Assembly (NCBI GenBank): GCA_036785375.1
Contig: JAWMAR010000563.1
Coordinates: forward strand, 930,001-994,000
From: Leucoraja ocellata
Taxonomy: Eukaryota
Length of the DNA stretch: 64,000 nucleotides
Direction of reading: 5' to 3'
Positions 6,428 through 60,390 of the stretch are shown piece after piece; within the stretch, counting starts at the first letter, position 1, and every line of letters begins with the position of its first letter. Position numbers and translations under genes: made by a program. Under the pieces are notes generated by a model. That model was not told where the DNA came from and ran no database searches. It worked only from the letters and a program-made list of their open reading frames with translations.

Positions 6428-8155
6428 TGACTGACTCTTACACAAAGCCCACGGGGCTGGACGGACTCTGTCCCCCCGGCAGAGGGGTCTGTGGCCACGG
6501 ATCAGTCTCCGATCAAGGGGAGAAATGTCCGCACTGAGCCGGGGTGGAGAATGTTTGTGATCCTCACCCCCAGAGCACTGTGGAAGCTGCGTCACCGAAG
6601 TCTTTCAATGTTCCGGTTGTATCAATGTTGTTCCCCACAGACCAGGGAATGGGGCGTGGGATTGTGGGGGAGGGTGGGACAGGGAGGGGGATGCAGAGGG
6701 TGAGGGGAAGGTTGGGATGAACATCAGTGGGGGTGAGAGATGGAGCAGGCAAGGACACGGGCTGAGCATGGGTGGGGAGGAGTGGATGAGAGGTGAAGAG
6801 GGGAGGGGAGGACGGGAGAGGGAATGTGAGGAGGGGATAAAGCCAGGAGGAAGGAATGATTAGGAGGGAGGGAAGGAGATGGGGAGGGGGGTTTGTGAGG
6901 GGGAGGGGCTAGGGAAAGGGAGTTGATAGAGAAGGGGAGGAAGAGATTAGGAGGGAAGAGGTGTGGAGTGGGAGGAGAGGAATGGAAGTGTTGGTGAGGG
7001 GAGCGGGATGGGGATGTGGGAGGAATTGGGGAAGGGGAGCACAAGGAAGGAGGCGCGGGGAAGGAGGGGCAGGTGGAATACCTGTGAGAGATTTCATTCA
7101 CAGCACCCAGCTCCATTCCTGTAATTTCTGTCGAAGGACCTCAGTCTTGAAACGTTGACTGTGTTTCTCTCTCCACAGAGGGACAGTGCAGGTAATCTAC
7201 ACTGGAATCTTGATCACCTGGGACAATGGGACAAAGAAATGGCAAGTGGAGTTTAATTACAATAAACACAAGGTGTAGCAAGGTTGAGGGACAGGACTTA
7301 GGCCGTAAGTGCTGGAGCTGAGGGAAATGTTGTGGGACTGAGAGACCTAGGGGGAAGGGACATAGTTCCATGAAGGTGGTGACACAGGTTGACAAGGCGG
7401 TGAAGGTGGCGTGTGACACGCTTGCCTTCATCAGTCAAAGCGTTGAGTACAGGAGTTGGGAAGTCATGTTCTTAAGCGATAGGAGCGGAATCATGCCACT
7501 CGGCCCATCAAGTCTACTCCGCCGTTCTATCACAGCTGCTTGGTAAGGCCGTATTTGCTGAACTCTGCAGTACCTGTTGCCCTGTCATTAAACTGGTAAA
7601 GGTGCAACAATGTCTACTAAGATGTTACATGGTCAGGGGGGTTTGAGCTATGGGGAGAGGCTGGATAGGCTGGGTACTGAGTGTAGAAGGCTGGTCTTGT
7701 ACAGAGTGGTGCATGGAACGAGCTGCTGGAGGAGGTAGTTGAGGCAGGTACTATCACGACATAAGAAACATTTAGACAGGTACATGTACAGGACAGAGTT
7801 AGAGGGATATGGGCCAAACTCCAGCAGATGAGATTAGTGTAGATGGGGCATGTTGGTCGGCGTGGGCAAGTTGGGCCAAAGGGCCTGTGTTCACGCTGCA
7901 TGACTCTATGACTGTGAGGTTTATAACACCACGGTGCAGAGTGCTGTTGTCAGCACGATGCTGTTACATCCCGGGAATCCCCGGTCACCGTCCACAGTCC
8001 ACGGTCCAATCTCTCCGTAGCCGTCGGCAGCCGCTTCCCACAAGCTCCGCCCTCAGCACGGACTGGCACGGATCAGTTCACTCCATCGTCAACCTCCCGG
8101 GCCGGCTCTCTCCGCCCGAACCCTCACGGCCACGGCGGAGGGAAGCAGAGAACAT

Positions 8156-8799: not shown

Positions 8800-9500
8800 G
8801 TGGGTCTGTGAGTCAGGGTCTGTGTCTCAGGGTCTGTGTGTCACGGTCTATGTGTCAGGGTCTGTGTCTCAGGATATGTGTACCTAGGGTGCATCTGTGT
8901 GTCACGGCTGAGGCCCCAAGGTCTGGATCCACAGGGACTCCGCTGGGTCTGTGCCTCTGATCTGTCCCGAGTCTCTGTCCTTTGATTCTGTCCCAGGGAC
9001 TGTCCCTCGCCTGTCCCCAGTCTGTCCTCAGGGTCTGTGTCTCAGCGTCTGTGTCTCAGGAGCTGTCCCCAGGGTCTGTGTCCCCAGGGCCTGTGCCCTT
9101 AACGGCCTGAATCCCTCAGGGTCTGTATCTCAGGATCAGTCCCCAAGGTCCGTGTCTCAGGGTCTATGTGTCAGGGTCTGTAGCAGGGTCTGTGTCAGGG
9201 TCTGTGTCAGTGTCTGTGTCAATGTCTGCGTCCCAGGATCAGTGTGTCAGGTTCTGTGTGTCGGGGTCAGTCTGTCGGAGTCTTTGTGTCAGTGTCTGCG
9301 TATCAGGGTCTGTGTCAGGGCCCGTCTCATGATCTTTGTCAGGGTCTGTGTGTCAGGGTCTGTGTCACGGTCTGTGTAAGTGTCTGTGTCAGGGACTGAG
9401 TGTCAGTGTGCCAGGGTCTGTTTGTCAGGGTCTGCGTGTCAGGGTCAGTATGTCAGGGTCTGTGTGTCAGGGTCAGTATGTCAGGGTCTGTGTCGGTGGG
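8800..9500. repeat. Degenerate 12-14-bp minisatellite (cagggtctgtgt)n
   Basis: Motif reiterated throughout; explains the spurious Val/Cys-rich ORFs. Confidence 0.9.
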
Positions 9501-10149: not shown

Positions 10150-10458
10150 CGTCACTGCCCCACCTCTCTCTCCCGCTTCACACTTTCGCTTTCATGAGCT
10201 CGCCTGTCGCGCTCCACCCCGGCAACCGGTGTCGCGGCGCCAGCTGTGCTGCTGATTGGACAGACTGGGCTATTTATCACCAGCTTCACGGGGCTCTTCT
10301 GCCCGGATACCGGTGACTCACGGGCGGGCAGGACTGTGATTGGCCGTGGGCACGGCGCCGACCAATCAGCGCGGGGTGCGGGCGTGAAACGGGCGGGCAA
10401 GCGGTGCAGAGTGAATCGCGCATGCGCCCAGGACTAGCAAACTCACCACAACCTGGAC
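10150..10458 (+). promoter_or_regulatory. MHC class I-type promoter: ISRE + two X1-X2-Y modules + CCAAT + GC box
   Basis: ISRE actttcgctttc 10182-93; X1/X2 cccggcaaccgg-tgtcgcg 10218-36 with Y ctgattgg 10252-59; X1/X2 cccggataccgg-tgactca 10302-20 with Y gtgattgg 10336-43; ccaatcag 10362-69; CpG-rich. Confidence 0.75.
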
Positions 10459-10570
10459 CAAAGATTACAGAGGAGCAAGATAGACCACTCCTCGAAAAAC
10501 GCGTAGTATGATGTGTGTGATTGTCGACGCCATTTTTTGAGGCATTTTATTGAGCTTACCCCACACTGTC

Positions 10571-11785
10571 ATGGCGTCCTTATCTAAATCTTCACATCAC
10601 TGCTCTGCTATCAAGTATTCTAATCGTAAATCTAAATGACCCGACCTGTCATTCTTTAGGTTCCCCAATAAAAAAGAAAGGTGAGAAAATATTATTATTA
10701 TTTTCAGTCGATATTCTGTCGTGAAAATGTTATTTTCTGTTCTCCCATGAACAGCCATTGGGAAACTAGGTTTGTCGGTACATTAGAAAGTTATTAGACT
10801 TATTTTTAATAGAACTTTACTTACCATAATAATAAAGACAATTTTAACACTTCTGTACATTTTTGGTTTTGTTCTTGTAAGGGATTGGTCTCCACAATAT
10901 GGCCCGCGGGACACATCAGGTCCAGTGACCATGGGATTTTTCGAGCTCAGATTCGTGTCCGAGAATGCGGCGGCTGTTACCCATTATGTCCCTCGAATTG
11001 TCGAGACATCACAAGCAAAGATCACAAGCCCGCCGTGAAGAAGGGTGCAATCAAATATTATACAACTCTGCTCTATCATCTTTGGGTGCAATGGTGGGTC
11101 GGGGGGTTAGGCGGCGGCGGCCGCAATCAAAGATACGAGAGGAGCTCTGCTCTATAATCTTTGGTCGGAATGGGACGGCTGCGCGTTATAATGTGGTATC
11201 GTTCCACTCCCTCTCCCCCTTCTTCCTCTCCCTGTCCCCCTTCTCCCTCTCCCCCCTTCTCCCTCTCCCCCCTTTTCCCCTTCTCCCTCTCCCCTTCTCC
11301 CTCTCCCCCATCTCCCTCTCCCCCTTCTCCCTCTCTTCTCTCTCCCCTCTCTTTCGATCTCTCTCTCCCCTCTTTTCTCTCGATCTCTCTCTCTCCCTCT
11401 CTTCTCTCGATCTCTCTCTCTCTTCTCTCGATCTCCCTCCCTTCCCTCTCTCCCTCCCTTACCTCTTCGTGAGAGTTGGCAGCTCTGCTATGCCTTGGGT
11501 CCAAAAGAGGATAGAAAGAAAATACTTAATGGTCTTTAAGGTAAATTGACATATTAGAGGCAAAAAGCATCTTCAACATACAGATCTCCACACAACTGAA
11601 AACAATTGCATTTAAGTGATATATCATCCATTGTTCAGGCATGTAGTTATGATCATCTTTTTTCTTATTAGTTAATCCTAAATGATATCTCCTGTAATTT
11701 CAGATGTCAACAGTGGGTCCAGAATACTCGTCGACAAGATCTCCTGCACCGAACTGCAGAGTATTTGTCAAATAACTGCCGTCTT
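10571..11785 (+). pseudogene. Two-exon THAP zinc-finger remnant of the transposase (10571-10680 + 11704-11785)
   Basis: MASLSKSSHHCSAIKYSNRKSK*PDLSFFRFPNKKE|RCQQWVQNTRRQDLLHRTAEYLSNNCRL; GT-AG phase-2 intron; stop at 10637, second Cys codon reads TAT; similarity ends before the catalytic domain. Confidence 0.85.
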
Positions 11786-11895
11786 ATGTACATTGTGTGA
11801 AATTGTGATTTGTTAACTGCACAAAACTAATGCAAATGGCGATATATTTATTATTGTATCTACGTTGGACATTTTGCTCTTTGGTGTCAGAACGC

Positions 11896-12038
11896 GGGGT
11901 GGGAGATTGCAACCTTCACGTGGTCCACCCTGTTTCGACAAATGCAATCAACCCGGTGTGCACAGTCAAATAAGATCAAATAGAACAAGTTGTCCTACAA
12001 CTTTAGGCTGTGCACGCCATACGCAATAAGAAGAAGAA
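11896..12038 (+). mobile_element. 143-bp 5'-truncated retroposon with (aag)n tail
   Basis: 12-bp TSD gtgtcagaacgc at 11884-95 and 12039-50. Confidence 0.8.
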
Positions 12039-13339
12039 GTGTCAGAACGCAGTCTGAAGAAGGCTTCCGACCTACAACATCACCTATTCCTTTTCTCCAG
12101 AGATGCTGCCTGACCCACGGAGTTACTCCAGCATTTTGTGTCTATCTCTGTTTAGATTGGACTCGTGTGTGGAGATTGCGGCTGGTCTGGTGATCTAGAA
12201 CGAGGGCCAAAGTCTCAGAATATGGGTCATGATATTTAGTAATGAGACAAGGAGCAGTTTCTTCACTCAAGGGCTGGGAATCTTGGAATTCTTTATCGCG
12301 TGAGATGGTGGAAGTCGAGCCCTTGAAAGGAGAGATTTTTTTTTTCAAATACAAAAAGGATGAAGGATAATGGAGAGAATGTGGGAATAAGGTGTTGAGT
12401 TGCAGGATCAACAGTAATATTACTGATGGTGGTGTGAACTTAGATGGCTTATCCTTGCTTCTATTTCTTACAGAGACACAGCACGGAAACAGGCCCTTTG
12501 GCCAACCGCATCCGCATTGACCAGCAATCCCCGCACACTAACACCATCCTACACACACTAGGGACAATTTACACTTATACCAAGCCTACAAACCTGTATG
12601 TCTTTGGAGTGTGGGAGGAAACCGAAGATCTCGGAGAACACCCATTCAGTCATGGGGGAATGTACGAACTCAGTACAGACAGCACCCACTGTAAGGCAGC
12701 AACTTTACTGCTGCACCACCATGCCGCCCTTAATCCACTAGGGCACTAGGTTACAATAAACTTCCTACATATTCCAGGAATGCATCTCATAAAAATGGGA
12801 GAGATTTAAATGCAGTGTAAAATCTGCTCTCAGTTTCCTAGATCGATATTGCTCTAATGGCCTCTTTGTATCATTTTCTTTGATTTAAACCATCCATTGT
12901 TCTGCATTTAGATTTTATTTTTCCCCTGTGGATCACAAGGCACTGTTTGTTTCAGGGGTGACTCTAATCTCCAGCGTAATTTGACAAGACAGCCAAGAGG
13001 GCAAACACAGGCAGTTCAGAGCTGCTGCCTGTATCGCATGAGAGAACAAGAATGAGACCAACTTGTTTTTTGCAGATCATCAACCCTTGACTGATGTTAT
13101 CAATGCCGATGGTGACTCAAGGAGACTCAACCAGGTGGTGGTTTACAAAGGTCCATGCCCATTGTTCCTCATGGCATACCACCAGCCTCAACAGATCACC
13201 TAGTCATAGAGTCTCACAGCGTAGAAGCAGGCCCTTCAGCTCAACTTGTCCACGCTGGCCAACATGTCCCATCTACACTAGTCCCACATGCCTGCATTTG
13301 GCCCATACCCCTCTAAACCTGTCCTAACCATCAAATAAC

Positions 13340-13945
13340 CTAACAGAACTGTCATATGAGGAAAGATTTAAAAGACTAGGCTTGTATTCACTGGAGTTTA
13401 GAAGGATGAGGGGGAATCTTATCACATTGTTTACAGTGTACTATGTTTACAGATTCTGTTGTGCTGCTGAAAGTAAGAATTTAATTGTTCTATCTGGGAC
13501 AAGCTAGATGCAGGAAATTGTTCTACATGACAATAAAACACTCTTGTTAGATACAAGGGGATCTTATAGAAACGTCTAAATGAATAAAAGGACTGAACAA
13601 GCTAGATACAGGAAAAATGTTCCCAATGTTGGGCGAGTCCAGAACCAGGGGCCACAGTCTTAGAACAAAGGGGAGGCCATTTAAGACTGAGGTGAGAAAA
13701 AACGTTTTCACCCAGAGAGTTGTGAATTTGTGGAATTCCCTGCCACAGCGGGCAGTGGAGGCCAAATCACTGGGTGGATTTAAGAGACAGTTAGATAGAT
13801 CTCTAGGGGCTAGTGGAATCAAGGGATATGGGGAGAAGGCAGGCATGGGTTATCGATTGGGGCTGATCAGCCATGATCACAATGAATGGCGGTGCTGGCT
13901 CGAAGGGCCAAACGGCTTCCTCCTGCACCTATTTTCTATATTTCT
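13340..13945 (+). mobile_element. CR1 3' fragments nested in the THAP element
   Basis: ORF 13617: FPMLGESRTRGHSL...FTQRVVNLWNSLP; CR1 3' UTR. Confidence 0.9.
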
Positions 13946-16249
13946 AGAACACTCATCCAGTAATCCTCGAGCCCACCAGCTCATCCCGTAGTCAATTCAT
14001 CAGCTTTTCCATAAGAACTTCCATCAGTTCTTCCAAAAGAATGACAATCGGACAATCTCGATTACCCTCAGCCCATCAAGCAGCCCCTTAATTCGCACAG
14101 AAGTCTGAACTATTGAATGCTCACTGCATCTCTTTCCATGTCAGCAAGTTAATATCCAGCTGCATGAACCATGTGAAAAAGGAATAAATAGATGCATGTG
14201 GTGCAGTGATTTGTGCAGCACTATAGGTCTGGAGACCAAGAGGAGTTCACCATTGAACGGAGTTTGAACGGGGGGGCTTGAGGCCCCCGACCGAGGAAGA
14301 ACAAAAGGAAGGGACTTGAACTTTATTTCGCCTTCCATCATAGTGAGGAATGTGTAGGAGTCACTTTGGTGAATGTCCGTATTAAAATGTGTTTGTGAGT
14401 GCTGTTGCTTTTAATTGTATGACTGACCTGGCCAATGAAATTCCTCGTATGTTGCAAAACATGCTTGGCAAATAAAATCTGATTATGATTCTGAAAAGCC
14501 TTTCCCATACTCTTTCCTCTCTTTGATCTTTTTGCAGTTGACTGCCTTTCTGTACTTGTTGCAAGAGATTGTTGTGGCATCCAGCATCCTCGGAGAATGT
14601 AGAATTAAAGGCAGAGGCAATAAGATGGTTATTTGCCTCAAGATTGGGTTATTGTATCTCCAGAGGCTCTGGGAGACACAAGGTTCAAGAGGGAACACAA
14701 AAAGCCTAATTAGGAAGAATATTAAGAGTAAGATTTTCAATTAAAATACTGTAATTGATGGAACCTTGCCTTTAAATTGGTTCTTGGATGAAACCCTGAT
14801 GGTTCTCACATTATCTCTTTAAATTTACTCTCCTTTTCACACTTGCATTAAAACACACAGCCACCGCCATTCACAGTGATACTGCCCGGCACTCATAATT
14901 ACAGTCAACACAGCCACCTTGACAGCCACACAAAATGATGTAAATAAAAATTGTTTTCCTTGTTTAAGAAGTTCAATTTAGAATTATTTGAAATTGTGGG
15001 GTTTGGTACAAAATACTGCTGACCCACAAATGTGTTGCTATGCGACATTCACATTTAAAAAATCCATGTCTCAAAAAAAGCAAGAAGATGCCCATGTTAT
15101 TTGACCAACATCAGATGAATTTAAATATGTAGGTATGTATTCATTAGTTTTGCTCTTAATTCCCTTTTCCAAATCATTAATATATATGGTAAACAGTTGC
15201 GGCCCCAACACCAAGCCTTGCGGCAAAAAAATCCAGATGTTTAGTCAAACATGATTTCCCTTTCATAAATCCATGTTGACTTGGACTAATTATTTTACTG
15301 CTATCCAAATGCCCCATTATTACATCTTTTATAATTGACTCTAGCATCTTTCACACCACCAAAGTCGGGCTAACTGGTCTGTAATTCCCCGTTTTCTCTC
15401 ACGCTCCTTTCTTGAAAAGTGGGATAGCATTAGCTATCCTCCAATTCACAGGAACTGATCGTAAATCTATTGATCGTTGGNNNNNNNNNNNNNNNNNNNN
15501 NNNNNNNNNNNNNNNNNNNNNNNNNNNNNNNNNNNNNNNNNNNNNNNNNNNNNNNNNNNNNNNNNNNNNNNNNNNNNNNNNNNNNNNNNNNNNNNNNNNN
15601 NNNNNNNNNNNNNNNNNNNNNNNNNNTATGTGTGCATATTTATGTGTATACGTATGTATGTATGTATGTGTATATATGTGTGTGTGTATATATGTATGTG
15701 TATATATATGTATGTGTATAAATATATATATATGCAGATATTTATTATTACTATATAATTATATATATAATTGCCTTTATGGTTCATGCACATCATCTTA
15801 CAAGACAAATGAATTCCTGTAGTGATTATTTAAATCAGTTGCTTCTGATCCATGAGAATAAACTTTATTATCTCTAACTTGCCTCTCACACACAGACACA
15901 CATTCATATAAATATGTAAAATATATATACGTAAAATTTAATTTTGTGCAGTGTGTGTTAAAGCAATACAAGGGAAACTGTACAATACAATGCAAGGGAA
16001 ACTACGCAAAGGAGGGGGCTGTTCCCGCTACAAGATACTCGAGGATCTTTGCTTTGGATCAAAGATTATAGCGGAGCTCTATAATCTTTGCTTTGGATCA
16101 CAGCGGGTGGCATACCGGAAGTCACGTGTCGCATTAAAAAATGGCGGCCGTGACGTTCCGTCACGTACTACACGCCAGTCCATTGGATTTCGGAGGAGTG
16201 GTCTATCTTGCTCCTCTAGGATCTTTGACCTGGACAGTCGGGGGCGACC

Positions 16250-16317
16250 ATGCTCTGCCCGCTGCTGCCGCTGTTGCTGCTGCACGCCCTCCCTCCTGGC
16301 TCGAGCCCACGCTGCAG
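16250..16317 (+). pseudogene. MHC class I leader (signal peptide) exon with a +1 frameshift
   Basis: gcgaccATG, Leu-rich stretch, donor cag|gtgggt; deleting one C in gccctccctcctgg gives MLCPLLPLLLLHALLLARAHAA-G in phase 1, matching the alpha1 acceptor. Confidence 0.65.
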
Positions 16318-16361
16318 GTGGGTGACGGGCACTGATGGGCTGCCAACCCAGTCCCGGACAG

Positions 16362-17816
16362 TGGCTGAGGGTCTGTGTGTGGGTGAGGGTCAGTGTGTGG
16401 GTGACGGTCAGTGTATGGGTGAGGGTCAGTGTGGGTGAGGGTCAGTTTGTGGGTGGGTCAGTGTGTGGATGAGGGTCAGTGTGGGTGAGGGTCAGTTTGT
16501 GGGTGAGGGCCTGTGTGGGTGAGGGTCAGTGTGTGGGTGAGGGTCAGTGTGTGGGTGAGGGCCTGTGTGTGGGTGAGGGTCAGTATGTGGTGTAGGGTCA
16601 GTGTGTGGGTGAGGGTCAGTATGTGGGTGAGGGTCAGTGTGTGGGTGAGGGTCAGTGTGTGGGTGAGGGTCAGTGTGTGGGTGAGGGCCTGTGTGTCGGT
16701 GACGTTCAGTGTCGGGCTGGGCACCTTGTTCCGGTCAGGGGAATTGGCGGTGAGGGCCTGTGTGGGTGACGGTCAGTATGTGGGTGAGGGCCTGTGTGTG
16801 GGTAAGGGTCAGTATGTGGGTGAGGGTCAGTGTGTGGGTGAGGGTCAGTGTGTGGGTGAGGGTCAGTGTGTGGGTGAGGGTCAGTATATGGGTGAGGATG
16901 AGTGTATGGGTGAGGGTCAGTGTGTGGGTGAGGGTCAGTGTGTGGGTGACGGTCAGTGTGTGGGTGAGGGTCAGTGTGGGTGAGGGTCAGTGTGTGGGTG
17001 AGGGTCAGTGTGTGGGTGAGGGTCAGTGTGTGGGTGAGGGTCAGTGTGTGGGTGAGGGTCAGTTTGTGGGTGAGGGTCAGTGTGTGGGTGAGGGTCAGTG
17101 TGGGTGAGGGTCAGTGTGTGGGTGAGGGTCAGTGTGTGGGTGAGGGTCAGTGTGTGGGTGAGGGTCAGTGTGTGGGTGAGGGTCAGTGTGTGGGTGAGGG
17201 TCAGTGTGTGGGTGAGGGTCAGTGTGTGGGTGAGGGCCTGTGTGTGGGTGATGGTCAGTGTCGGGCTGGGCACCTTGTTCCGGTCAGGGGAATTGGCGGT
17301 GAGGGCCTGTGTGGGTGATGGTCAGTGTGTGGGTGAGGGTCAGTGTGTGGGTGAGGGCCTGTGTGTGGGTGAGGGTCAGTGTGTGGGTGACGGTCAGTTT
17401 GTGGGTGACAGTCAGTGTGTGGGTGAGGGTCAGTGTGTGGGTGAGGGCCTGTGTGTGGGTGAGGGTCAGTGTGTGGGTGAGGGTCTGTGTGTGGGTGAGG
17501 GTCAGTGTGTGGGTGAGGGTCAGTGTGTGGGTGAGGGTCAGTGTGTGGGTGAGGGCCTGTGTGTGGGTGAGGGTCAGTGTGTGGGTGAGGGTCAGTGTGT
17601 GGGTGAGGGTCAGTGTGTGGGTGAGGGTCAGTTTGTGGGTGAGGGCCTGTGTGTGGGTGAGGGCCTGTGTGTGGGTGAGGGTCTGTGTGTGGGTGAGGGT
17701 CAGTGTGTGGGTGAGGGTCAGTGTGTGGGTGAGGGTCAGTGTGTGGGTGAGGGCCTGTGTGTGGGTGACGGTCAGTGTCGTGCTGGGCACCTTGTTCCGG
17801 TCAGGGGAATTGGCGA
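16362..17816. repeat. 18-bp G-rich minisatellite (gggtgagggtcagtgtgt)n with three 39-bp spacers
   Basis: Tandem array; spacer gtcgggctgggcaccttgttccggtcaggggaattggcg at 16711, 17260, 17777. Confidence 0.97.
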
Positions 17817-21565: not shown

Positions 21566-24500
21566 AGAAACATAGAAACATAGAAACATAGAAATTAGGT
21601 GCAGGAGTAGGCCATTCGGCCCTTCGAGCCTGCACCGCCATTCAATATGATCATGGCTGATCATCCAACTCAGTATCCCGTACCTGCCTTCTCTCCATAC
21701 CCCCTGATCCCCTTAGCCACAAAGGCCACATCTAACTCCCTCTTAAATATAGCCAATGAACTGTGGCCTCAACTACCCTCTGTGGCAGAGTTCCAGAGAT
21801 TCACCACTCTCTGTGTGAAAAAAGTTCTTCTCATCTCGGTTTTAAAGGATTTCCCCTTTATCCTTAAGCTGTGACCCCTTGTCCTGGACTTCCCTAACAT
21901 CGGGAACAATCTTCCTGCATCTAGCCTGTCCAACCCCTTAAGAATTTTGTAAGTTTCTATAAGATCCCCTCTCAATCTTCTAAATTCTAGAGAGTATAAA
22001 CCAAGTCTATCCAGTCTTTCTTCATAAGACAGTCCTGACATCCCAGGAATCAGTCTGGTGAACCGTCTCTGCACTCCCTCTATGGCAGTAATGTCCTTCC
22101 TCAGATTTGGAGACCAAAACTGTACGCAATACTCTAGGTGTGGTCTCACCAAGACCCTGTACAACTGCAGTAGAACCTCTCTGCTCCTATACTCAAATCC
22201 TTTTGCAATGAAAGCTAACATACCATTCGCTTTCTTTACTGCCTGCTGCACCTGCATGCCTACCTTCAATGACTGGTGTACCATGACACCCAGGTCTCGC
22301 TGCATCTCCCCCTTTCCCAATCGGCCACCATTTAGATAATAGTCTGCTTTCCTGTTTTTGCCACCAAAATGGATAACCTCACATTTATCCACATTATACT
22401 GCATCTGCCAAACATTTGCCCACTCACCCAGCCTATCCAAGTCACCCTGCAGTCTCCTAGCATCCTCCTCACAGCTAACACTGCCCCCCAGCTTAGTGTC
22501 ATCCGCAAACTTGGAGATATTGCCTTCAATTCCCTCATCCAGATCATTAATATATATTGTAAATAGCTGGGGTCCCAGTACTGAGCCTTGGGGTACCCCA
22601 CTAGTCACTGTCTGCCATTGTGAAAAGGACCCATTTACTCCTACTCTTTGCTTCCTGTTTGCCAGCCAGTTCTCTATCCACATCAATACTGAACCCCCAA
22701 TGCCTTGTGCTTTAAGTTTGTATACTAATCTCTTATGTGGGACCTTGTCGAAAGCCTTCTGGAAGTCCAGATACGCCACATCCACTGGTTCTCCCCTATC
22801 CACGCTACTAGTTACATCCTCGAAAAATTCTATAAGATTCGTCAGACATGATTTACCTTTCGTAAATCCATGCTGACTTTGTCCAATGATTTCACCACTT
22901 TCCAAATGTGCTGCTATCCCATCTTTAATAACTGACTCTAGCAGTTTCCCCACTACCGATGTTAGACTAACTGGTCTGTAATTCCCCATTTTCTCTGTCC
23001 CTCCCTTCTTAAAAAGTGGGGTTACGTTTGCTACCCGCCAATCTTCAGGAACTACTCCAGAATCTAAAGAGTTTTGAAAGATTATTACTAATGCATCCAC
23101 TATTTCTGGAGCTACTTCCTTAAGTACTCTGGGATGCAGCCTATCTGGCCCTGGGGATTTATCGGCCTTTAATCCATTCAATTTACCCAACACCACTTCC
23201 CGGCTAACCTGGATTTCACTCAATTCCTCCAACTCCTTTGACCCGCGGTCCCCTGCTATTTCCGGCAAATTATTTATGTCTTCCTTAGTGAAGATGGACC
23301 AAAGTAGTTATTCAATTGGTCCGCCATATCCTTGTTCCCCATGATCAACTCCCCTGTTTCTGACTGCAAGGGACCTACATTTGTTTTAACTAATCTCTTT
23401 CTTTTCACATATCTATAAAAACTTTTGCAGTCAGTTTTTATGTTCCCTGCCAATTTTCTTTCATAATCTATTTTTCCTTTCCTAATTAAGCCCTTTGTCC
23501 TCCTCTGCTGGTCTTTGAATTTCTCCCAGTCCTCCGGTATGCTGCTTTTTCTGGCTAATTTGTACGCATCATCCTTCGCTTTGATACTATCCCTGATTTC
23601 CCTTGTTATCCATGGATGTACTACCTTCCCTGATTTATTCTTTTGCCAAACTGGGATGAACAATTTTTGTAGTTCATCCATGCAGTCTTTAAATGTCTTC
23701 CATTGCATATCCACCGTCAACCCTTTTAGAATTAATTGCCAGTCAATCTTGGCCAATTCACGTCTCATACCCTCAAAGTTACCTTTCTTTAAGTTCAGAA
23801 CCATTGTTTCTGAATTAACAATGTCACTCTCCATCCTAATGAAGAACTCAACCATATTATGGTCACTCTTGCCCAAGGGGGCATGTACAACAAGATTGCT
23901 AACTAACCCTTCCTCATTACTCAATACCCAGTCTAAAATAGCCTGCTCTCTCGTTGGTTCCTCTACATGTTGATTTAGATAACTATCCCGCATACATTCC
24001 AAGAAATCCTCTTCCTCAGCACCCCTGCCAATTTGATTCACCCAATCTATATGTAGATTGAAGTCACCCATTATAACCGTTTTGCCTTTGTCGCACGCAT
24101 TTCTAATTTCCTGTTTGATACCATCCCCAACTTCACTACTACTGTTAGGTGGCCTGTACACAACACCCACCAGCGTTTTCTGCCCCTTAGTGTTGTGCAG
24201 CTCTACCCATACCGATTCCACATCCTCCAAACTAATGTCCTTCCTTTCCATTGCATTAATCCCCTCTCTAATCAGTGACGCTACCCCACCTCCTTTTCCT
24301 TTCTGTCTATCCCTCCTGAATATTGAATATCCCTGGATGTTCAGCTCCCAGCCTTGGTCACCCTGGAGCCATGTCTCCGTGATCCCAACTATATCATAGT
24401 CATTAATAGCTATCTGCACATTCAACTCATCCACCTTATTACGAATGCTCCTTGCATTGAGACACAAAGCCTTCAGGCTTGTTTTTACAACACTCTTACC

Positions 24501-25794
24501 CCTTACACAATTATGTTGAAAAGTGGCCCTTTTTGATTTTTGCCCTGGTTTTGTCTGCCTGCCACTTTTACTTTTCACCTTGCTACCTATTTCTTCTACC
24601 CTCATTTTACACCCTTCGGTCTCTACGCTCACACATTTAAGAAACCCTTTCCCTTTAACTCCATCCTCCACTGTCCCATTCAACACCCCACCCCCCTTAT
24701 TCAGTTTAAAGCCACCCGTGTAGCAGTGGCAAACCTGCCTGCCAGAATGCTGGTCCCACACCTGTTAAGATGCAACCCGTCCCTTTTGTACAGTTCCCCC
24801 TTACCCCAAAACAGATCCTAGTGATCTAAGAATCTAAATCCGTGCCCCGTGCACCAGATCCTCAGCCACACGTTCAGGTCCCGTATCTCCCTGTTGCTGC
24901 TCTCGCCAGCACGGGGAACTGGAAGCAAACCGGAGATAACAACCCTGGAGGTCCTGCTTTTCAACATTTTTCTGAGCTCTCTAAAGTCACGCTGCAGAAT
25001 ATTCATCCCCTTCTTTCCGACATCGTTTGTGCCGACATGCACTACCACTTCCGGATGTTCACCTTCGCCCTTGAGGATTTTCTGCACTCTGTCCGTGACA
25101 TCCTGGATCCTGGCACCGGGAAGGCAGCACACCATCCTCGCATCCCGTCTGTTGCCGCAGAAACCCCTGTCCGTACCTCTCACGATGGAGTCTCCCACTA
25201 CAATGGCCTTGCCTGCCTTAGGCCTTTTTGGTTTTGGCTCAACAGCCCTATTCGCGTCACAGGCCAGTCCGCCGCTCACGTCTTCTGTCCCAACAGCTTC
25301 TAAGCGGATGAACCTGTTTACAAGAGGTACATCACCCGGGGACGTTGGCATTCCATGCTTCCCTCCCTTTCTCACTGTCTCCCACCTTCTCTCTTCCAGT
25401 ACCTTAGGTGTAACAATCGTACTGTAGGACTTGTCGAGGAACGACTCCGTTTCTCGTACGAACCGGAGGTCATCCACTTGCTTCTCCAGTTCCCCAACAC
25501 GGCCCTTCAGGAGCTCTACCTGGATGCATTTTTCGCATTTGTAGCAGCCAGAGGCACCAGCGGTGTCCTTGACCTCCCACATACTGCAAGCATCGCACTG
25601 AATCAGCTTGCCTGACATCTCCTTCTTTCGTCTCCCTCTCAAGCGTATTGCGTGGTCTCCTCTCCGAAGACTCTCGAGCCAAAGACTCACACTTTTCTCA
25701 CAGGGCACTTCCCTCACTAGGCCGCTCACTCACTGCCGCTCGCAAAGAGCTGTCCTGCTTAAATTGACTGATAAATTGCCTGATTTACCAATTT
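21566..25794 (-). mobile_element. Near full-length young CR1 LINE nested in the DIRS
   Basis: ORF1 24818..25729 (CxxC zinc finger, GDSIVRG/HVGTND esterase); ORF2 23274..24761 + 21769..23268 (APE + RT FADD); (tttctatg)n tail; TSD agggt at 21561-65 and 25795-99. Confidence 0.97.
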
Positions 25795-48811: not shown

Positions 48812-49716
48812 TCACTTTATTGAATTGGAAATTAAAACAAATGGGCTCTTAATCACCTTTATACATTCCTCCCTGAATTTTTTCTGGGACACCCCATAAA
48901 TAAACGTGTTGGTGCAGGCACTCAACGCCCTCAGCATATATCCGGACTGTTCCGCAATGGTAAATGGGTCGTTGTTATCTGTTGCTAATAGCTCCACGTC
49001 GAGGAAGTACACACTCAAGAAGCACACAAAGTTTACCATCCACAGTAGGACGAAGCTGCCGGATATGGCCAGCAATAGAATGAGGGACTTCCTTCTGTTC
49101 TCCACCTCTTGATCGGCGCCGCCCTCGTCCTTCGTGTTCCTTCGAAGACCGCTCCTCACTCTGTTGGCGTGTATGATGTGCCTCATTGTCAGGGCATTGA
49201 GGAGTATGATCAATAAAATTGGTACAAATGGGGTTAAAATTGTTTCGATGGACAAAAGTGCTGCCCATAACTGTGAGGTGTAGAATTCTGGGGTTATGCC
49301 ACAGGACCAGCCCACGTTGTCAATTATTTCTCGAGGTACGTAGGCAAAATATACAGGTATATTTTGAATAATACTTAAGATACATGTCAGCGCTATCACC
49401 AAAGCCGCAGTTCTCTCGGTGCAATATTTTGTTCGTAAATTCTGACTACATATAGTGACAAATCGATCGAAGGTGAAGGTCACCGTAAGCCAGACAGAGC
49501 AATCGATGCAAATAAAATTAAAGAAGATATTCAGTTTACAAACTTGAGTTATGTTGAGGAATGAATAAGGAAAATAGCCATCTGAAATCTCGGAGAGAAT
49601 TACCTCGAAGATCAGAACCAATAAATCAGCTACCGCCATGGATACCAGATAGCGGGAGATACATTTGGAGAGTCCACATTTTCCCCGAGAGAGAATCACG
49701 ATTGCCATCAGGTTAG
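48812..49716 (-). CDS. GPR139-like class A GPCR, exon 2 (905 nt)
   Basis: Acceptor cttacag|CT; hydrophobic TM segments, ADLL (TM2), DRF (TM3), NTFIY (TM7); no stops. Confidence 0.92.
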
Positions 49717-49892
49717 CTGTAAGGAAGATGATATAAAAATCACCAACATTCAATATTCCACATGAACAACAGTTCAGCAGTTCTTCATATGAAGGCGAAT
49801 ACATTGTTTGATTCCGCAACCTACTGCTTTAACTCGTGTCGCACACACATCTCTCATTCTGAAAAATACATCTGTAAGATATAGTTCGCAAA

Positions 49893-54553: not shown

Positions 54554-57500
54554 TCTATATATTAAAACTCTGTGTGTGTGTGTGTGTGTTTCTGCCTGGG
54601 TGTGTTTGTGGGTGCCAGATTCGGCCTTTGATTCCATGTTACGCCAGCACTCCGTCATTCAACTCCGTCATAATTTCCATGTCGCTAGCTCATTCACTTT
54701 TACATCCGATTTTGCACTTCTTTTTATGTTTTCTTTTTATGTACCAATTTAAAAAAATAAAATCCTACACCCCCACCCCCCACTCACTCATTTTGTCGCC
54801 TCCTGCTGGCCAGCAACCATAACGGCTGCTGACGCCCGCCTTGCTCCAAAGATGCCGCCATTTTTAATGCCAGGCCTCACACTCTCTAACCAGCTGGAGT
54901 GGGGGCCAAACCCGGCGTTTGGCATGGGGCCGTGACGGGGACCAAAAAGAAGCCGCCCCACGCCCGCCAGCAGTCTAGTCTCTCTGTCTCTCCTCTCTCT
55001 CTCTGCCCCTCTCTCTTCACAGCCCGCGGCTCGAATCATGCACGCCCGCTCCAACCCCCCCACCCTTAATCTCTCTCCCCCATCCTATCATTCCTCTACC
55101 CCTCCTCTCCCCCACTTCGCCCCCACTCCGCCCTCCCCCCCGCTCCAACCTTCCCCGTTGTTCAAATTGCGCAGAAATAACCAAAGATCCAAGAGCACCT
55201 ATAGGATCTTGGAGAGAACGAGCGTTCACAGCCCGCGGCTCGACTGATGCACGCCCGATCAACCCCACCTTCACCTCAGGTGCTTCGAGTAGCAATGTTA
55301 CAAAATTTTGAGATTTTAAAAATCAAGTCTGCAATTTATCCCATCAGATAAAGTATAACAATAAGTTTAATTTGACACCAAATTCACTTTCATATCTCAA
55401 GTATTAAAAAAAGTTATGGCCATTTTCATACTCGGAAATTAGCATCTTGTTCCCTATTGATTTTCAATGGACATTACAAAAAAGCTGTGATCTTGGATAG
55501 TCAAAAGCCCATTTCTTAAGGAAAGATTAACATTTTTAAATAGCCTAAGTGTCCAAAGATTATTCACAAATAATTCACAATATAACATGATTTTTATATC
55601 TAATTTACATTAATTTATAGGCCAAATGGAAGGAATTTAGTGTTCAATTGCTGTAAATAAATGCCCATTTAAATCGGCTTTCTAGTGGGTTCATGTGAAC
55701 GCGCTGGTTTAGAACGTTGACATCGCGCTGGATTAGAGCCCTCAAATGCTGAGAAAAATACTGCGGGATATAAAAAGCCCAAAATGAACTACTCGCTATA
55801 GATAACTTGATATACAGGGTTATATATATGCCCCATTTAATGTAAAAATAAGGTACATACCTTTAATTGTTTGCTTTATAAAACCCTGGGGCTGCGAGAG
55901 GTTGCGGAATGAGACAGTAATTTTAAAACTATTATAACTATATTATCGAGGCCTATAAAACTAATAATACCTTTTGCGACCGGGTCTTGCAGCGATTTTT
56001 CGTTAATGATTTACTAGGCTGAACATCTAGTAAAAATCGCGTTTTAAACCCGCCCCCTCCAAACAGCGCCAAAATCGCGGATATGGCTGTGGGCAGATTC
56101 CCAATGACGATTCAGGTAGGTTTTGTAACATACCTACTTCGAGTCTGTCACTGTTTGCGGAAGTGGGCACGCGCTCTCCATTCTAGCAGACGCTCTCATC
56201 TCTTTGTGGGGGCGCGTGCTTAGTGAAGAGTGCATTTTATTTAAAACATTTTTTTTTACGTTAACATTTGATTGCATTTCATTGTTAAATTCTTTATTTG
56301 TTTTTCATTTAATTAAATTATTTCTCACTTAACATTACTACTTTTTAACACTAACTTTTAATTTCAAATACCGTTTTTTAAAATAAATTTGCTGTCTTTT
56401 CATAGACAGCTCCTCCTTCTCCCTCTCTCCCTCTTACCCCCTCTCTCCCCCCTCCTCTCCCCCTCATCTTCTCCCCCCTTCCTCACCCCCTTACTCTCCC
56501 CTTCCTCACCCCTTCCTCACCCCCCTTCCTCTCCCCCTTCCTCACCCCCTTACTCTCCCCCCTTCCTCTCCCCATTCCTCCTCCCCCTCCTCTCAAAAAA
56601 CGTTTTTCTAACATTACCTTTTCCCCGTTTGTTACATATTTACCATTTTGCAATTTCTAAATTCTTAACGATTGTCTTTAATACTTAAAGACAACATTCA
56701 TTTCAAATGCCGTTTTTTTAAATAAATTTGCTGCCTTTTCATTGACAGTTTAGAGTCAAAATCATTGTTATTTTACTTTGTGAACGGTGACTTGTTTGTG
56801 TTTTTTTAAAAGAGTGTTTGTGGGGGCGGGTGCTTAGTGTCTGTCACCGTTGAATTTTTTTGAATTTTTAAAAAATATGGTTTAACAAACAATTTTTCTA
56901 ACAGTAATTTTTTTCCGTTTGTTACGTCTTTCCAATTTTGAAATTTCTAAATTCTTAACGATTGTCTTTAATTCTTAAGACAACATTTCATTTCAAAGAC
57001 AGCATTTTTTTGATTTTATATTGACGTTTAAATTGACAAAATATTTTAAAAAACATTTCATTGTAATTGGCAACAGATTTCATTGTGATTGATTTCAATC
57101 TAGAGGAAAGGCTCCATTTTTAAGAAATTGATCTGTTTTCATTGACAACTGAGATTTCAAAACAATTTCTTTGTGATTTATTTCATTTGATCTGAAAGAT
57201 TCCATTTTGAATAAATTCATCTGTCATCATTGATAACTGAGAGTGTGTTTGGGCTTTTTTTAAATTCAGAAAATTTCCATTTTGAACAACTTAATCCAGT
57301 CTTCATTGACAACAGAGATTCTGTTTTCAAATCATGCCAAGAGGAAGGAATAAACATACAGGGCGGTCGTGTGATGAGAAAATGAGACATCGAGAAGTAA
57401 TGAGGAGGAGAAAACAACAACAGACTCAGCAAGAAAGAACACAACATCTCCGAGGTAATCCGGAGATAAACCAGGAGAGAAGGGCACAACAGACACAGCC

Positions 57501-60390
57501 AGAAACATCTCAGTGTCTACAAGATAGTCGGGGGAGACAGCGGGAGAGAAGTGCACATGAGATGCAGCAAAAAACAACTCAACGTCTCAGAGAAAAACGA
57601 GAGAGAGAGAGCGCAAGAGACGGATCAAGAAATAACTCAACGTCGCAGTGAGAAACGAGACAGGGAGGAGGAGAGAAGGGATAAAGAGATGCAGCCAGAA
57701 AGAAGTCAACGTCTCAGAAATAAACGAGAGAGGGAGCAGGAGAGAATAACTCAAGAGACAGAGCCAGAAAGAAGTCAACGTCTCAGAAATAAACGAGAGA
57801 GGGAGCAGGAGAGAAGGACTCGAGAAATGTATCAAGAAACAACTCAACATCTTGAGGAACATAAAGAAAGAAATCAAATGAGAAGGGATTTATATTTATA
57901 TGGTTATATGAGAAGGGATGCAGAGAGGGGAGATGAAAGAACTAGATGAACTGGATGAACAGCGAGACAGAGATACAAGACAACGAAATGCACGACTTAC
58001 AAGGAGAAATATTAATGCTGATGTTGGTCAAATGACCAATGTTTGCCTTCATTGTCGAGCTAAACGCTACTCTGGAGAAACGAATAACTTTTGCTGCATG
58101 AAGGGTAAGGTCACCATTACTCCTCTGCAAACACTCCTGAATGCACTCATTAATTTGTATACAGGTGACACGCCACAAGCACATGAGTTCCAAAACAATA
58201 TTAGACAATACAATTGCCTCTTTCAATTCACGTCATTTGGTACCAATGAAGTGGTGTCACATGGATGGAATCCTTCAGTGATCATTCAAGGCCAGATTCA
58301 TCATTCATTAGTTCTTTGATGCCTCATCAAGATCAACAAAGTAAATTCTTACAAATCCATTTCATGGACCCACAAGATAGCGTTGAGTTGCGAATGAGTA
58401 TACTCCAAGATGCTGGTATTCAAAGGGACATTGTTGAAATGCTTGAAAACATGATAAGACTAAACAACTCTTACATTCATTCAATTATGATGGCAATGGA
58501 GAGAATTAGAGATTTACCGGAGGCATCAATCATTATTGATCTCAATTATCGGCCACCTTTCCAAAATGAACGGCGGTTTACCACGCAAACTGCAAATGAA
58601 GTTGCTGGCCTTATAGCAAACAGTAATGTGCCTGTGGCAACATCACGCCACATTGTCTTGAGAAGAAAACGAATAGGAGGAGCAGAAGGAGGTCTGCAAA
58701 TCATTTCAGAGTCCCATAGGTCTTATGGCAGTTTTCAATACATCATTTTCTTTCCACTTGGTGATGACGGGTGGCATTCACAACTCCAAATGAGTACCGG
58801 CAGAAAATTGACACTAATGCAATATTATGCATATAGAATCATGAATCGTGACAATGAATTCAACCAGCTTTTGAGAGGAGGACGACTCTTCCAACAATAT
58901 CTTGTTGATATGGCGGCTAAAATGGAAGGTGATAGACTGAATTATATTCGCATGAATCAGGTATCGTTGAGGTCAACGACGTACAAAGGACTGACGGATG
59001 CATTACATGATGATGATGACTTGGAAAACATTGGAAGGTGCATCATCCTCTCTTCAACATTTGTCGGTGGTCCCAGATATATGATGGGACGATGCCAGGA
59101 CGCCACGATGTATGTTCGGAAGTATGGTACTGCTGCATTCTTCATTACAATGACCTGCAATCCAAATTGGAGCGAGATCCAACAGTGCCTCTTTTCAAAT
59201 CAGCAGCCGTCTGATAGACCGGAATTAATAGCAAGAGTATTCGAGCGGAAAAAAAAAATATTCATGAAGACCGTCACTGGACCAGATGGCTTCTTAGGAA
59301 ACTGTATTGCTTTCATCTTGACTATGGAATATTAGAAGAGAGGCCTGCCTCATTTCCATTGTCTGCTTTGGCTTGATGAAGCGAGTAAGCCAAGACCTCA
59401 AAATTATGAAATATTTGTGCAAGCTGAAATTCCAGCCCCGCAAGCAGATCCTGAGCTGCATAAATTGATACTCAAGCACATGATCCATGGACCGTTCTGC
59501 AAGGCCACATCTCCATGTTGGAAGGAAGGAAGATGCACCAAAAGATTCCCAAAGCCATTTGTCAAAAGCACAATGTCTGGCGATGATTCGTATCCTCTGT
59601 ACAGGAGAAGATCTCCCGCAATGGGAGGATTTCAGGGACATCAAGAAGGTCGTCCGTTACAGACTATTACTTCTAATTGGGTTGTGCCCTATAATACTGA
59701 ACTATTGAAGGCGTTCAAATGCCACCTCAACGTCAAAATATGCTGCTCTGTACAGTCAATCAAATACGTCATCAAGTACACCTTGAAGGGATGTGATCAG
59801 GCAGCATTTGGAATTAACGTAAATGACAAGATTAAACAGTACCAGACTGGCAGATACATTGGTCCTTCAGAGGCATGGGCATCAGTCCTTGGATTTCTTA
59901 CTCATGAGAGACACCTCCCTGTCATTCGACTTGATGCCAGACCAAACAACAAGTATTTTTTGATGCTGCTCAGCAAGGGATGAATGATGGGATGACTTTG
60001 ACTGATCGATTGAACTCTGAAGGTCCGTTTGTCAGAACACTATTGTACGTTGATGTACCTCGATTTTATACATGGAGCAGCAAGAGATGGCGAAGAAGGA
60101 ATGTTCGGAAGAGAGTGGATAACTTCCCAGGTATTTTTGAAGTCAACGCTCTTGGACGAATACATGTCATTTCTCCAAAACACTGTGACCTCTTCCACTT
60201 GAGACTGCTTCTAAATCACGTGAAAGGACGAGTGTCTTTCGAGTCTTTGAAGACACATAATGGAGTAATTCTTCCTTCCTTCAAAGACGTCTGCAGAGAA
60301 AGAGGCTTGTTGGAAGCTGACGACTATTGGCAACAAACAATGGAAGATGCTGAGATGACAAGACTCCCCAGGGCAATCAGGTGCCGGAAG
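54554..60390 (+). mobile_element. Decayed autonomous Helitron (5' end + Rep domain, helicase missing)
   Basis: a|tctatatattaaaactc terminus; ORFs 57334-60462 with CxxC..CC zinc finger, FITMTCNPNW, EY*KRGLPHFH (HUH), KYVIKY. Confidence 0.92.
55290..56136. mobile_element. 847-bp non-autonomous DNA transposon with 7-bp TSD
   Basis: TIR tag[ca/gt]atgttacaaaa; TSD cttcgag at 55283-89 and 56137-43. Confidence 0.85.

What the first reader, a model, noticed from the sequence alone, without database searches (positions are those of the whole stretch)
11044..16098. Palindromic 31-36-bp scars that match P-type excision footprints
Seen: three micro-elements made only of two abutted TIR ends between 8-bp direct repeats: ggtgcaat[11052-11084]ggtgcaat; gccgcaat[11128-11163]gtcggaat (6/8); ctttggat[16060-16090 caaagattatagcggag-ctctataatctttg]ctttggat. 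Each keeps ~14-19 nt per end. Established: Drosophila P transposase makes a 17-nt staggered cut, so repaired donor sites keep ~15-18 nt of each TIR, whereas hAT excision leaves no TIR. Inference: fossil germ-line evidence of P chemistry in a jawed vertebrate; clustering inside the parent element suggests local hopping.
Basis: partly seen in the sequence, partly recalled or inferred. Interest (0 to 1): 0.88.

Follow-up and report, generated by a model that had tools for sequence, protein, structure and literature searches.

The report
Transposon-tip scars inside a P-like element
Three tiny palindromes made only of transposon end-tips between 8-base duplications are real and look like scars left when P-type jumping genes cut themselves out, but they are old, inherited parts of a multi-copy element, not fresh events at this spot.

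Summary
m1 (11052-11084), m2 (11128-11163) and m3 (16060-16090) are 33, 36 and 31 nt of two facing end tips, flanked by 8-nt direct repeats (8/8, 6/8, 8/8). Shuffles give 0.065 such structures per window. They lie inside a 5.8-kb non-autonomous element (10459-16227) with 40-nt inverted ends and the duplication ACCTGGAC on both sides.

No arm matches the 40-nt end beyond position 17-18. The junction types match the Drosophila P-element repair catalogue (PMC2895639). Scars of P-type excision is my best reading (0.55).

Three corrections:
- m1 and m2 share a derived junction, so there are about two independent events, not three.
- Contigs from four sequencing runs show many other copies carrying the same palindromes. 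They are built into the family, so local hopping at this locus is not shown.
- Membership of the P superfamily is inferred. No transposase is present and Pfam did not recognise the THAP-like exon pieces.

P-type activity in vertebrates is already known from zebrafish and human THAP9. Other first-reader notes report similar palindromes elsewhere in this genome. The assembly gap touches none of the three.

The parts
10451..10458 (.). Left 8-nt target-site duplication ACCTGGAC of the parent element
   Evidence: identical to 16228-16235.
10459..10498 (+). Left 40-nt terminal inverted repeat of the parent element
   Evidence: I1: 40 nt, 88% complementary to 16188-16227. One search gives both ends side by side.
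10528..10543 (.). Left subterminal inverted repeat (GCCATTTTTT core), partner at 16131-16146
   Evidence: I21: 16 nt, 88% complementary. One search shows the alignment of the two ends.
10572..10690 (+). Decayed THAP-like first exon. It has an in-frame stop, and the second zinc-ligand position is changed.
   Evidence: Read by motif only (C..., SFFRFP). Pfam found nothing in the 22-aa piece.
11044..11092 (.). m1: GGTGCAAT + 33-nt tip-to-tip palindrome (11052-11084) + GGTGCAAT
   Evidence: Arms match the end to position 14 (left) and 17 (right).
11120..11171 (.). m2: GCCGCAAT + 36-nt palindrome (11128-11163) + GTCGGAAT (6/8)
   Evidence: Arms run to position 17/18 and 17, with a 2-nt filler, or equally a 5-nt imperfect repeat CTCTG. 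It shares its right arm with m1.
11705..11797 (+). THAP-like second exon remnant (…W…R.D… pattern), ends in a stop
   Evidence: Read. Pfam and PDB searches of this 31-aa piece gave nothing. The exons were searched apart, never joined.
11800..15480 (.). Interior of the parent: nested unrelated repeats (very high-copy SINE-like pieces, LINE tail and RT fragments), no transposase reading frame
   Evidence: (stop-to-stop pieces), table 2 (depth alternates between very high and single-copy bins).
15481..15626 (.). Assembly gap (146 N) inside the parent; touches no palindrome
16031..16051 (.). F0: 21-nt palindrome made of two CAAAGATCCTCGAG-type arms overlapping at CTCGAG. It abuts m3's left duplication and has no matching 8-mer on its left.
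   Evidence: (flanks 1/8). This is the geometry expected if two 17-nt overhangs annealed at a 6-nt self-complementary stretch.
16052..16098 (.). m3: CTTTGGAT + 31-nt palindrome (16060-16090) + CTTTGGAT
   Evidence: Arms 17(18)+14(13). The one departure from the end consensus (C at 16072) reads A in 16/49/20/35 contigs of the other copies.
16131..16146 (.). Right subterminal inverted repeat
   Evidence: I21.
16188..16227 (-). Right 40-nt terminal inverted repeat of the parent
   Evidence: I1.
16228..16235 (.). Right 8-nt target-site duplication ACCTGGAC

Best explanation
The three palindromes are repair scars of cut-and-paste excision by a P-type transposase.

Proposed sequence of events (inferred):
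1. Sibling elements of the same family inserted into an ancestral (master) copy of this non-autonomous element, each duplicating 8 nt.
2. They later excised by a staggered cut that left up to 17 nt of each inverted end as 3' overhangs on the donor.
3. End joining then sealed the overhangs. m3 is a near-blunt join (17+14). The m1/m2 ancestor has a 2-nt filler, or equally a 5-nt templated insertion. The neighbouring F0 fits annealing at a 6-nt microhomology.
4. The m1/m2 scar was then copied locally.
5. The scarred master amplified to many copies, of which 10459-16227 is one. This copy later took in unrelated nested repeats.

What is shown: the structures, their non-random nature, the cap of the arms at 17-18 nt, the shared junction of m1 and m2, and their presence in many other copies.

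What is inferred: the superfamily, the 17-nt cut, and the order of events.
For: - Structure and statistics: (3 tip pairs with flanks at least 6/8, against 0.065 in 200 shuffles).
- Parent element: 40-nt inverted ends 35/40 complementary, 16-nt subterminal inverted repeats, identical 8-nt duplication. This is the architecture described for Drosophila P and zebrafish Pdre2.
- Arm length: in 6 of 6 arms the similarity to the 40-nt end stops at position 14, 17 or 17/18 and never continues to 19-26.
- Tip variant: both arms of a palindrome carry the same variant (TTATAG in m3 and in the right arms of m1/m2; CCTCGAG-type in F0), although the parent's own two ends differ. This fits each scar coming from one donor element.
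- Drosophila comparison: germ-line junctions after P excision are the two 8-nt duplications plus at most 17 nt of each end, joined blunt, with 1-3-nt microhomology or insertion, at 5-10-nt microhomology, or with templated insertions (PMC2895639 passages and Table 1).
- Other superfamilies: hAT makes hairpins on flanking DNA and Tc1/mariner leaves 2-3 nt (PMC3878927 passages).
- Ancestral m3: at 16072 the other copies read A, so the ancestral m3 matched the end tip perfectly as 17+14.
Against: - There are only about two independent events (m1/m2 and m3), so the cap at 17 rests on four to six arms.
- m2 equals m3 plus CTCTG. Both independent events therefore have the same 17+14 core, although I could find no microhomology that would favour it. 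This also fits one small element that moved.
- No empty or full allele was seen.
- P membership is not demonstrated. There is no transposase frame, and the THAP-like pieces gave 0 Pfam families and 0 PDB matches.
- The tip CAAAG and an 8-nt duplication also fit hAT.
- F0 lacks a left duplication.
- The zebrafish THAP9 excision products described in the text I read show larger flanking deletions, not retained tips.
Confidence: 0.55

Rival explanations
1. Mobile micro-elements. A 31-36-nt unit made of two end tips is itself a minimal non-autonomous transposon. It inserted at three sites and made a fresh 8-nt duplication each time.
For: m2 is m3 plus a 5-nt CTCTG, and m1 and m2 share one junction, so all three could descend from one unit. 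Each has its own 8-nt flanks. Other first-reader notes list similar 22-40-nt tip hairpins elsewhere in this genome (unchecked).
Against: The units lack positions 18-40 of the inverted end and the subterminal repeats. From recall, Drosophila P needs well over 100 nt at each end. The lengths differ (21, 31, 33, 36 nt), and the tip variants differ between units but agree within a unit. That is easier to explain if each derives from a different full element. Contigs covering m3 extend at least 20-37 nt to either side at 80% or more likeness to the parent, so they are copies of the parent, not isolated units.
Confidence: 0.12
2. Extreme internal deletion in place. A nested sibling element was cut, and gap repair copied from the sister chromatid aborted almost at once. 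This left a tiny deletion derivative rather than a pure overhang join.
For: In Drosophila most recovered products of P{wa} excision are incomplete synthesis followed by end joining. Internally deleted copies are the rule in P families.
Against: Synthesis from a template would extend arms beyond 17 nt, and none of the 6 arms passes 17/18. This rival still needs a P-type cut, so it differs from the best explanation only in the repair route.
Confidence: 0.13
3. Functional or structural parts of the element. The tip-like palindromes are extra transposase-binding or pairing sites kept in the family, and the flanking 8-mers are by-products of small tandem duplications.
For: They are present in many copies. 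The 8-mer at m3 lies inside a longer 27-nt direct repeat (16038-16064 against 16077-16103, 85%; D11). Short direct repeats are common in this window (1156 overlapping 8-mer pairs against about 60 in shuffles, mostly satellites).
Against: The 27-nt repeat is explained by two right-arm tips plus the duplication plus 4 of 5 further letters. Two perfect 8/8 flanks exactly at the tip boundaries are not expected from slippage. The positions are not symmetrical at the two ends (594 and 670 nt from the left end, 138 nt from the right). Sharing among copies is equally explained by descent.
Confidence: 0.08
4. The element is a hAT, not P, transposon, and the palindromes arose by some other route.
For: hAT also makes an 8-nt duplication. 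The tip CAAAG fits the hAT end pattern, which I give from recall. A at position 7 of all five 8-mers fits NTNNNNAN, and T at position 2 fits in 2 of 5.
Against: hAT excision forms hairpins on the flanking DNA and leaves no element tips. The 5' exon reads as THAP-like rather than BED-like, by motif only. The Pdre2 8-mer quoted also has A at position 7.
Confidence: 0.05

Closest known systems
Drosophila P-element excision footprints (end joining at the 17-nt 3' overhangs; P{wa} junction catalogue, PMC2895639)
   Same: Both 8-nt duplications are kept. Only inverted-end tips lie between them, and no arm exceeds 17-18 nt. The same junction classes occur: near-blunt, short insertion or templated insertion, and 6-nt microhomology in F0.
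   Different: These are found as fossils in a genome, not recovered from a cross. They sit inside another copy of the same family and have since been amplified with it. The transposase and its cut have not been observed. There are only about two independent events.
Zebrafish Pdre2 / THAP9 P-like transposons (PMC10983969, PMC7776569)
   Same: A vertebrate element with terminal plus subterminal inverted repeats, an 8-nt duplication, and many internally deleted copies.
   Different: The ends here are 40 nt against 13 nt, with unrelated sequence. This copy has no transposase. The text I read on zebrafish excision products reports flank deletions, not retained tips.
MITEs derived from P elements (e.g. 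BuT5, PMC3698922; seen in the search listing only)
   Same: Non-coding derivatives that share the ends and the 8-nt duplication of a P-type partner.
   Different: BuT5 is about 1 kb long according to the abstract in the listing. The units here are 31-36 nt and lack everything but the tips.

Membership tests
P-superfamily DNA transposon (the parent, 10459-16227) | 8-nt target-site duplication | tested here: met
   ACCTGGAC at 10451-10458 and 16228-16235.
P-superfamily DNA transposon (the parent, 10459-16227) | Terminal inverted repeats plus subterminal inverted repeats | tested here: met
   40 nt at 88% (I1); 16 nt at 88%, about 70-97 nt from the ends (I21).
P-superfamily DNA transposon (the parent, 10459-16227) | N-terminal THAP zinc-finger domain in the transposase | tested here: inconclusive
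   The motif reading of two decayed exon pieces fits. Pfam gave 0 families for the 22-aa and 31-aa pieces and PDB phmmer gave 0. The pieces are very short. The exons were not joined and the stop was not read through.
P-superfamily DNA transposon (the parent, 10459-16227) | RNase-H-like DDE transposase with a GTP-binding insertion domain | tested here: not met
   This copy has no such reading frame. None turned up among the 10 long ORFs I scanned (of 55 ORFs of at least 130 aa in the window). The family's autonomous partner could not be reached with these tools.
P-type excision footprint | Both copies of the 8-nt duplication retained around the remnant | tested here: met
   m1 8/8, m3 8/8, m2 6/8. 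F0 is not met (1/8).
P-type excision footprint | Remnant consists only of the two end tips, each at most 17 nt | tested here: met
   6 of 6 arms stop at position 14, 17 or 17/18. Position 18 is ambiguous because it can belong to the other arm.
P-type excision footprint | A full or empty allele at the same site (in another individual, copy or species) | tested here: not met
   One search shows other copies that carry the palindromes. Among the rows shown, none leaves out about 39-44 nt at these sites. Many rows were not shown (33 indel rows, 4594 joints), and contigs cannot prove absence.
P-type excision footprint | Transposase shown to cut with a 17-nt stagger | not testable with these tools
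   Needs the family's transposase and cleavage-site mapping.
MITE | Short non-coding unit with inverted ends and a duplication, in many copies at unrelated sites | tested here: inconclusive
   Ends and duplications are present. Only copies inside the parent family could be seen. The window holds one weak extra candidate (55182-55212).
hAT transposon | Excision via flank hairpins, so footprints without element tips; BED/hATC transposase | tested here: not met
   The remnants are made of element tips (mechanism). No BED or hATC frame was found.

The most novel reading that the evidence does not exclude
The 31-36-nt tip-to-tip units are themselves mobile. They would be the smallest DNA transposons known, moved by a vertebrate P-type transposase that needs only about 14-17 nt of each end. 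Their build-up inside a non-autonomous element would then reflect targeting of P ends by P ends.
Probability: 0.1. Interest if true: 0.7.

Novelty: new member of a known kind. Interest (0 to 1): 0.4.

Why it matters
If these scars are what they seem, they record the cut geometry of an extinct or still unknown vertebrate P-type transposase. They would indicate that the unusual 17-nt staggered cleavage, shown biochemically only for Drosophila in the passages I read, is conserved in vertebrates.

A genome-wide census of such scars could test that without any enzyme. It would also measure how often P-like elements landed in and left one another.

It adds nothing to the already known fact that P-type transposases exist and act in vertebrates.

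Tried and rejected
Fetching other copies as sequence failed by every route:
- The spurious ORF over m3 found no protein (2 candidates, 0 scored).
- The ORF over m1/m2 against 1.84 billion representatives gave 2 hits. Both are tandem-repeat proteins matching a short WPA-type word, not copies of the element.
- End patterns found 0 loci in metagenome, prokaryote-genome and viral contigs, as expected for collections without vertebrates.
- The window holds no second copy. The 54-56.5 kb region holds no convincing one.

m1/m2 as a tandem duplication including flanks: the whole-unit alignment is clear (score 26). The flanks alone are not significant (p = 0.88 left, 0.55 right, 2000 shuffles each). 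So the copying route (local duplication or re-insertion) stays open.

A possible fourth scar at 11008-11029 is rejected as weak. It is a 9-nt repeat around AAAG, one of very many short direct repeats.

x55 (55182-55212) is not counted. Its flank match depends on where the boundary is put: 2/8, and 6/8 by my own hand count with the right boundary one letter further in.

Chance is rejected.

Papers:
- Passages read: PMC10983969, PMC7776569, PMC2895639, PMC3878927, PMC8230255, the bioRxiv preprint 10.1101/2022.05.24.493293, and PMC1592238. The last has nothing relevant; its '17 nt' is an unrelated deletion.
- All other papers were seen in search listings only.
- I found no paper describing genomic P-type scars in a vertebrate. 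Subscription papers, such as the original Pdre and P-cleavage papers, are not in the library. Supplements were closed, notably the excision-product sequences of the zebrafish preprint.


Full report
WHAT IS THERE

Reading the sequence and a repeat search show that the finding lies inside one DNA transposon, 10459-16227.
- It has 40-nt terminal inverted repeats (35 of 40 complementary, I1).
- It has a second, subterminal pair of 16-nt inverted repeats about 70-97 nt from the ends (I21).
- The 8-nt duplication ACCTGGAC lies directly outside both ends.
- Its 5' part carries two decayed exon pieces that I read as a THAP zinc finger (10572-10690, 11705-11797). This is a motif reading only. 
- The interior holds no transposase frame. 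It is filled with unrelated repeats whose depth in public runs swings from single-copy to extremely high (table 2).

THE THREE PALINDROMES

m1 (11052-11084, 33 nt), m2 (11128-11163, 36 nt) and m3 (16060-16090, 31 nt) are each two facing copies of the tip of this element's inverted end. Their 8-nt flanks are identical at 8/8, 6/8 and 8/8 positions.

This is far from chance.
- Of the 24 facing tip pairs in the window, 3 have flanks at least 6/8 identical. The mean in 200 shuffles is 0.065 and the maximum is 1.
- A family-blind strict scan of the whole window returns only m3.
- A relaxed scan gives 11 hits against 2.7 expected. Three of the extra hits are one AT-rich low-complexity spot.

THE ASSEMBLY GAP

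The gap 15481-15626 lies 426 nt from m3's flank and 4310 nt from m2's, and affects none of them. No contig bridged it. That the two halves belong to one element rests on the matched ends and duplications alone. The element's length is therefore approximate.

HOW MUCH OF EACH END IS KEPT

I aligned each arm to the parent's two 40-nt ends.
- Similarity stops at position 14 in the m1 left arm and the m3 right arm.
- It stops at position 17 in the m1 and m2 right arms.
- It stops at position 17 or 18 in the m2 and m3 left arms. Position 18 can equally belong to the other arm.
- None of the 6 arms continues into positions 19-26.

So m3 reads as 17+14. m2 reads as 17 + CT + 17, or equally as m3 with a 5-nt imperfect repeat CTCTG. 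The single departure of m3 from the tip consensus, C at 16072, reads A in 16, 49, 20 and 35 contigs of other copies in the four runs. The ancestral m3 therefore matched the tip perfectly.

Directly left of m3's duplication lies a further 21-nt palindrome, F0 (16031-16051). It consists of two arms of the CCTCGAG tip variant overlapping at the self-complementary CTCGAG. That geometry is expected if two overhangs annealed at a 6-nt microhomology. F0 has no matching 8-mer on its left, which I cannot explain except by a flank deletion.

COMPARISON WITH THE KNOWN MECHANISM

- Passages of PMC7776569 and PMC10983969 state that Drosophila P transposase makes an unusual 17-nt staggered cut and shows local hopping.
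- PMC2895639 (text and Table 1) lists germ-line junctions after P excision. They are the two 8-nt duplications with at most 17 nt of each end, joined blunt, with 1-3-nt microhomology or insertion, at 5-10-nt microhomology, or with templated insertions.
- PMC3878927 states that hAT forms hairpins on flanking DNA and that Tc1/mariner leaves 2-3-nt overhangs.

The palindromes here fit the P pattern in every structural respect, and no other superfamily's pattern that I know of.

A further point in favour: both arms of a palindrome share one tip variant, although the parent's own two ends differ. This is expected if each scar came from one donor element.

First, m1 and m2 are not independent. They share the derived right arm CTCTGCTCTAT.ATCTTTG (D14, 27, 48). 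Whether by local duplication or re-insertion cannot be told, because the flanks alone are not significantly alike.

Second, the palindromes are not private to this locus. I laid the contigs of four public runs, labelled as four organisms, on 10400-16300 at 80% likeness. These are contigs only, so they show presence and cannot show absence.
- The element's two end regions (10459 to about 11800 and about 15719 to 16227) are multi-copy, with dozens of differing contigs at single sites.
- At 11109, between m1 and m2, 23/30/22/20 contigs carry another letter.
- One 208-nt contig lies on 11016-11199 with 17 other letters and 14 gap letters. This is too few gap letters for either palindrome plus its duplication to be missing.
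- One 166-nt contig lies on 10946-11107.
- Only 1-2 contigs per run extend beyond the stretch's ends, so the flanks are single-copy.
- Single-copy interior pieces match at 1 difference in 182-186 nt in two further organisms' runs, so the locus itself is shared.
- No row shown leaves out a palindrome, but most rows were not shown.

The scars, if scars, were made in an ancestral copy and amplified with it. Clustering therefore says nothing about hopping at this locus.

Unchecked first-reader notes on other pieces of this genome describe 'three 31-36 bp TIR-stub hairpins' in a 2.7-kb piece, a 'family of 22-36 bp TIR-tip hairpins', a '40-bp TIR-only relic' and a structurally complete P element. 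These are leads that agree with this picture, not evidence.

VERDICT

Best reading (0.55): P-type excision scars fixed in the master copy of a non-autonomous P-like family.

Rivals:
- A mobile micro-element (0.12). It is favoured by the shared 17+14 core of m2 and m3.
- Aborted gap repair (0.13).
- Functional tip-like sites (0.08).
- A hAT element (0.05).

Membership of the P superfamily is inferred from architecture. No transposase was reachable.

P-type transposases active in vertebrates are already known. What would be new is natural evidence that the 17-nt cut is conserved. In seven literature searches I found no description of such genomic scars in a vertebrate. Subscription papers and supplements could not be seen. 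I did not establish the species.

Noticed in passing
window 16031-16051: A 21-nt palindrome (F0) of two tip arms overlapping at CTCGAG. It abuts the left duplication of m3 and has no matching 8-mer on its own left side. It may be a second scar at the same target 8-mer with a flank deletion.
   Followed up: partly
window 55182-55212: An isolated 30-31-nt tip-to-tip palindrome of the CC tip variant, 39 kb from the parent element. Its flank identity is 6/8 or 2/8 depending on the boundary. It is a weak candidate for an independent scar.
   Followed up: partly
window 11008-11029: A 9-nt direct repeat ATCACAAGC around AAAG, just left of m1. It could be read as a minimal scar (8-mer + CAAAG + 8-mer) but is equally simple slippage.
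   Followed up: partly
window 7189-7220: A 32-nt palindrome CAGGT...ACCTG with 7/8 identical 8-nt flanks. It might be a scar of another family or chance (2.7 such hits are expected at these thresholds).
   Followed up: no
window 10182-10458 and 16250-16438: The P-like element sits between a promoter-like stretch (noted by another reader as an X-Y/ISRE module) and an ATG followed by a leucine-rich, signal-peptide-like ORF. This would be an insertion into a 5' region, as Drosophila P elements prefer.
   Followed up: no
window 8800-9500 and 16343-17800: Related 12-18-nt satellites (GGGTCTGTGT / GGGTCAGTGT units) on both sides of the element. 55 copies are in register on the right side.
   Followed up: no
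window 21769-25726 (-), 48812-49816 (-), 58265-59332 (+): A LINE with endonuclease, reverse transcriptase and an esterase/OSK-type first ORF; an intronless rhodopsin-family receptor ORF; and a Helitron-like N-terminal domain ORF.
   Followed up: partly
window 54847-54870: The 7-nt tip CAAAGAT is fused directly to a GCCGCCATTTTTAATGC stretch that resembles the parent's subterminal repeat (18 nt, 94%). It may be the end of a deleted relative.
   Followed up: partly
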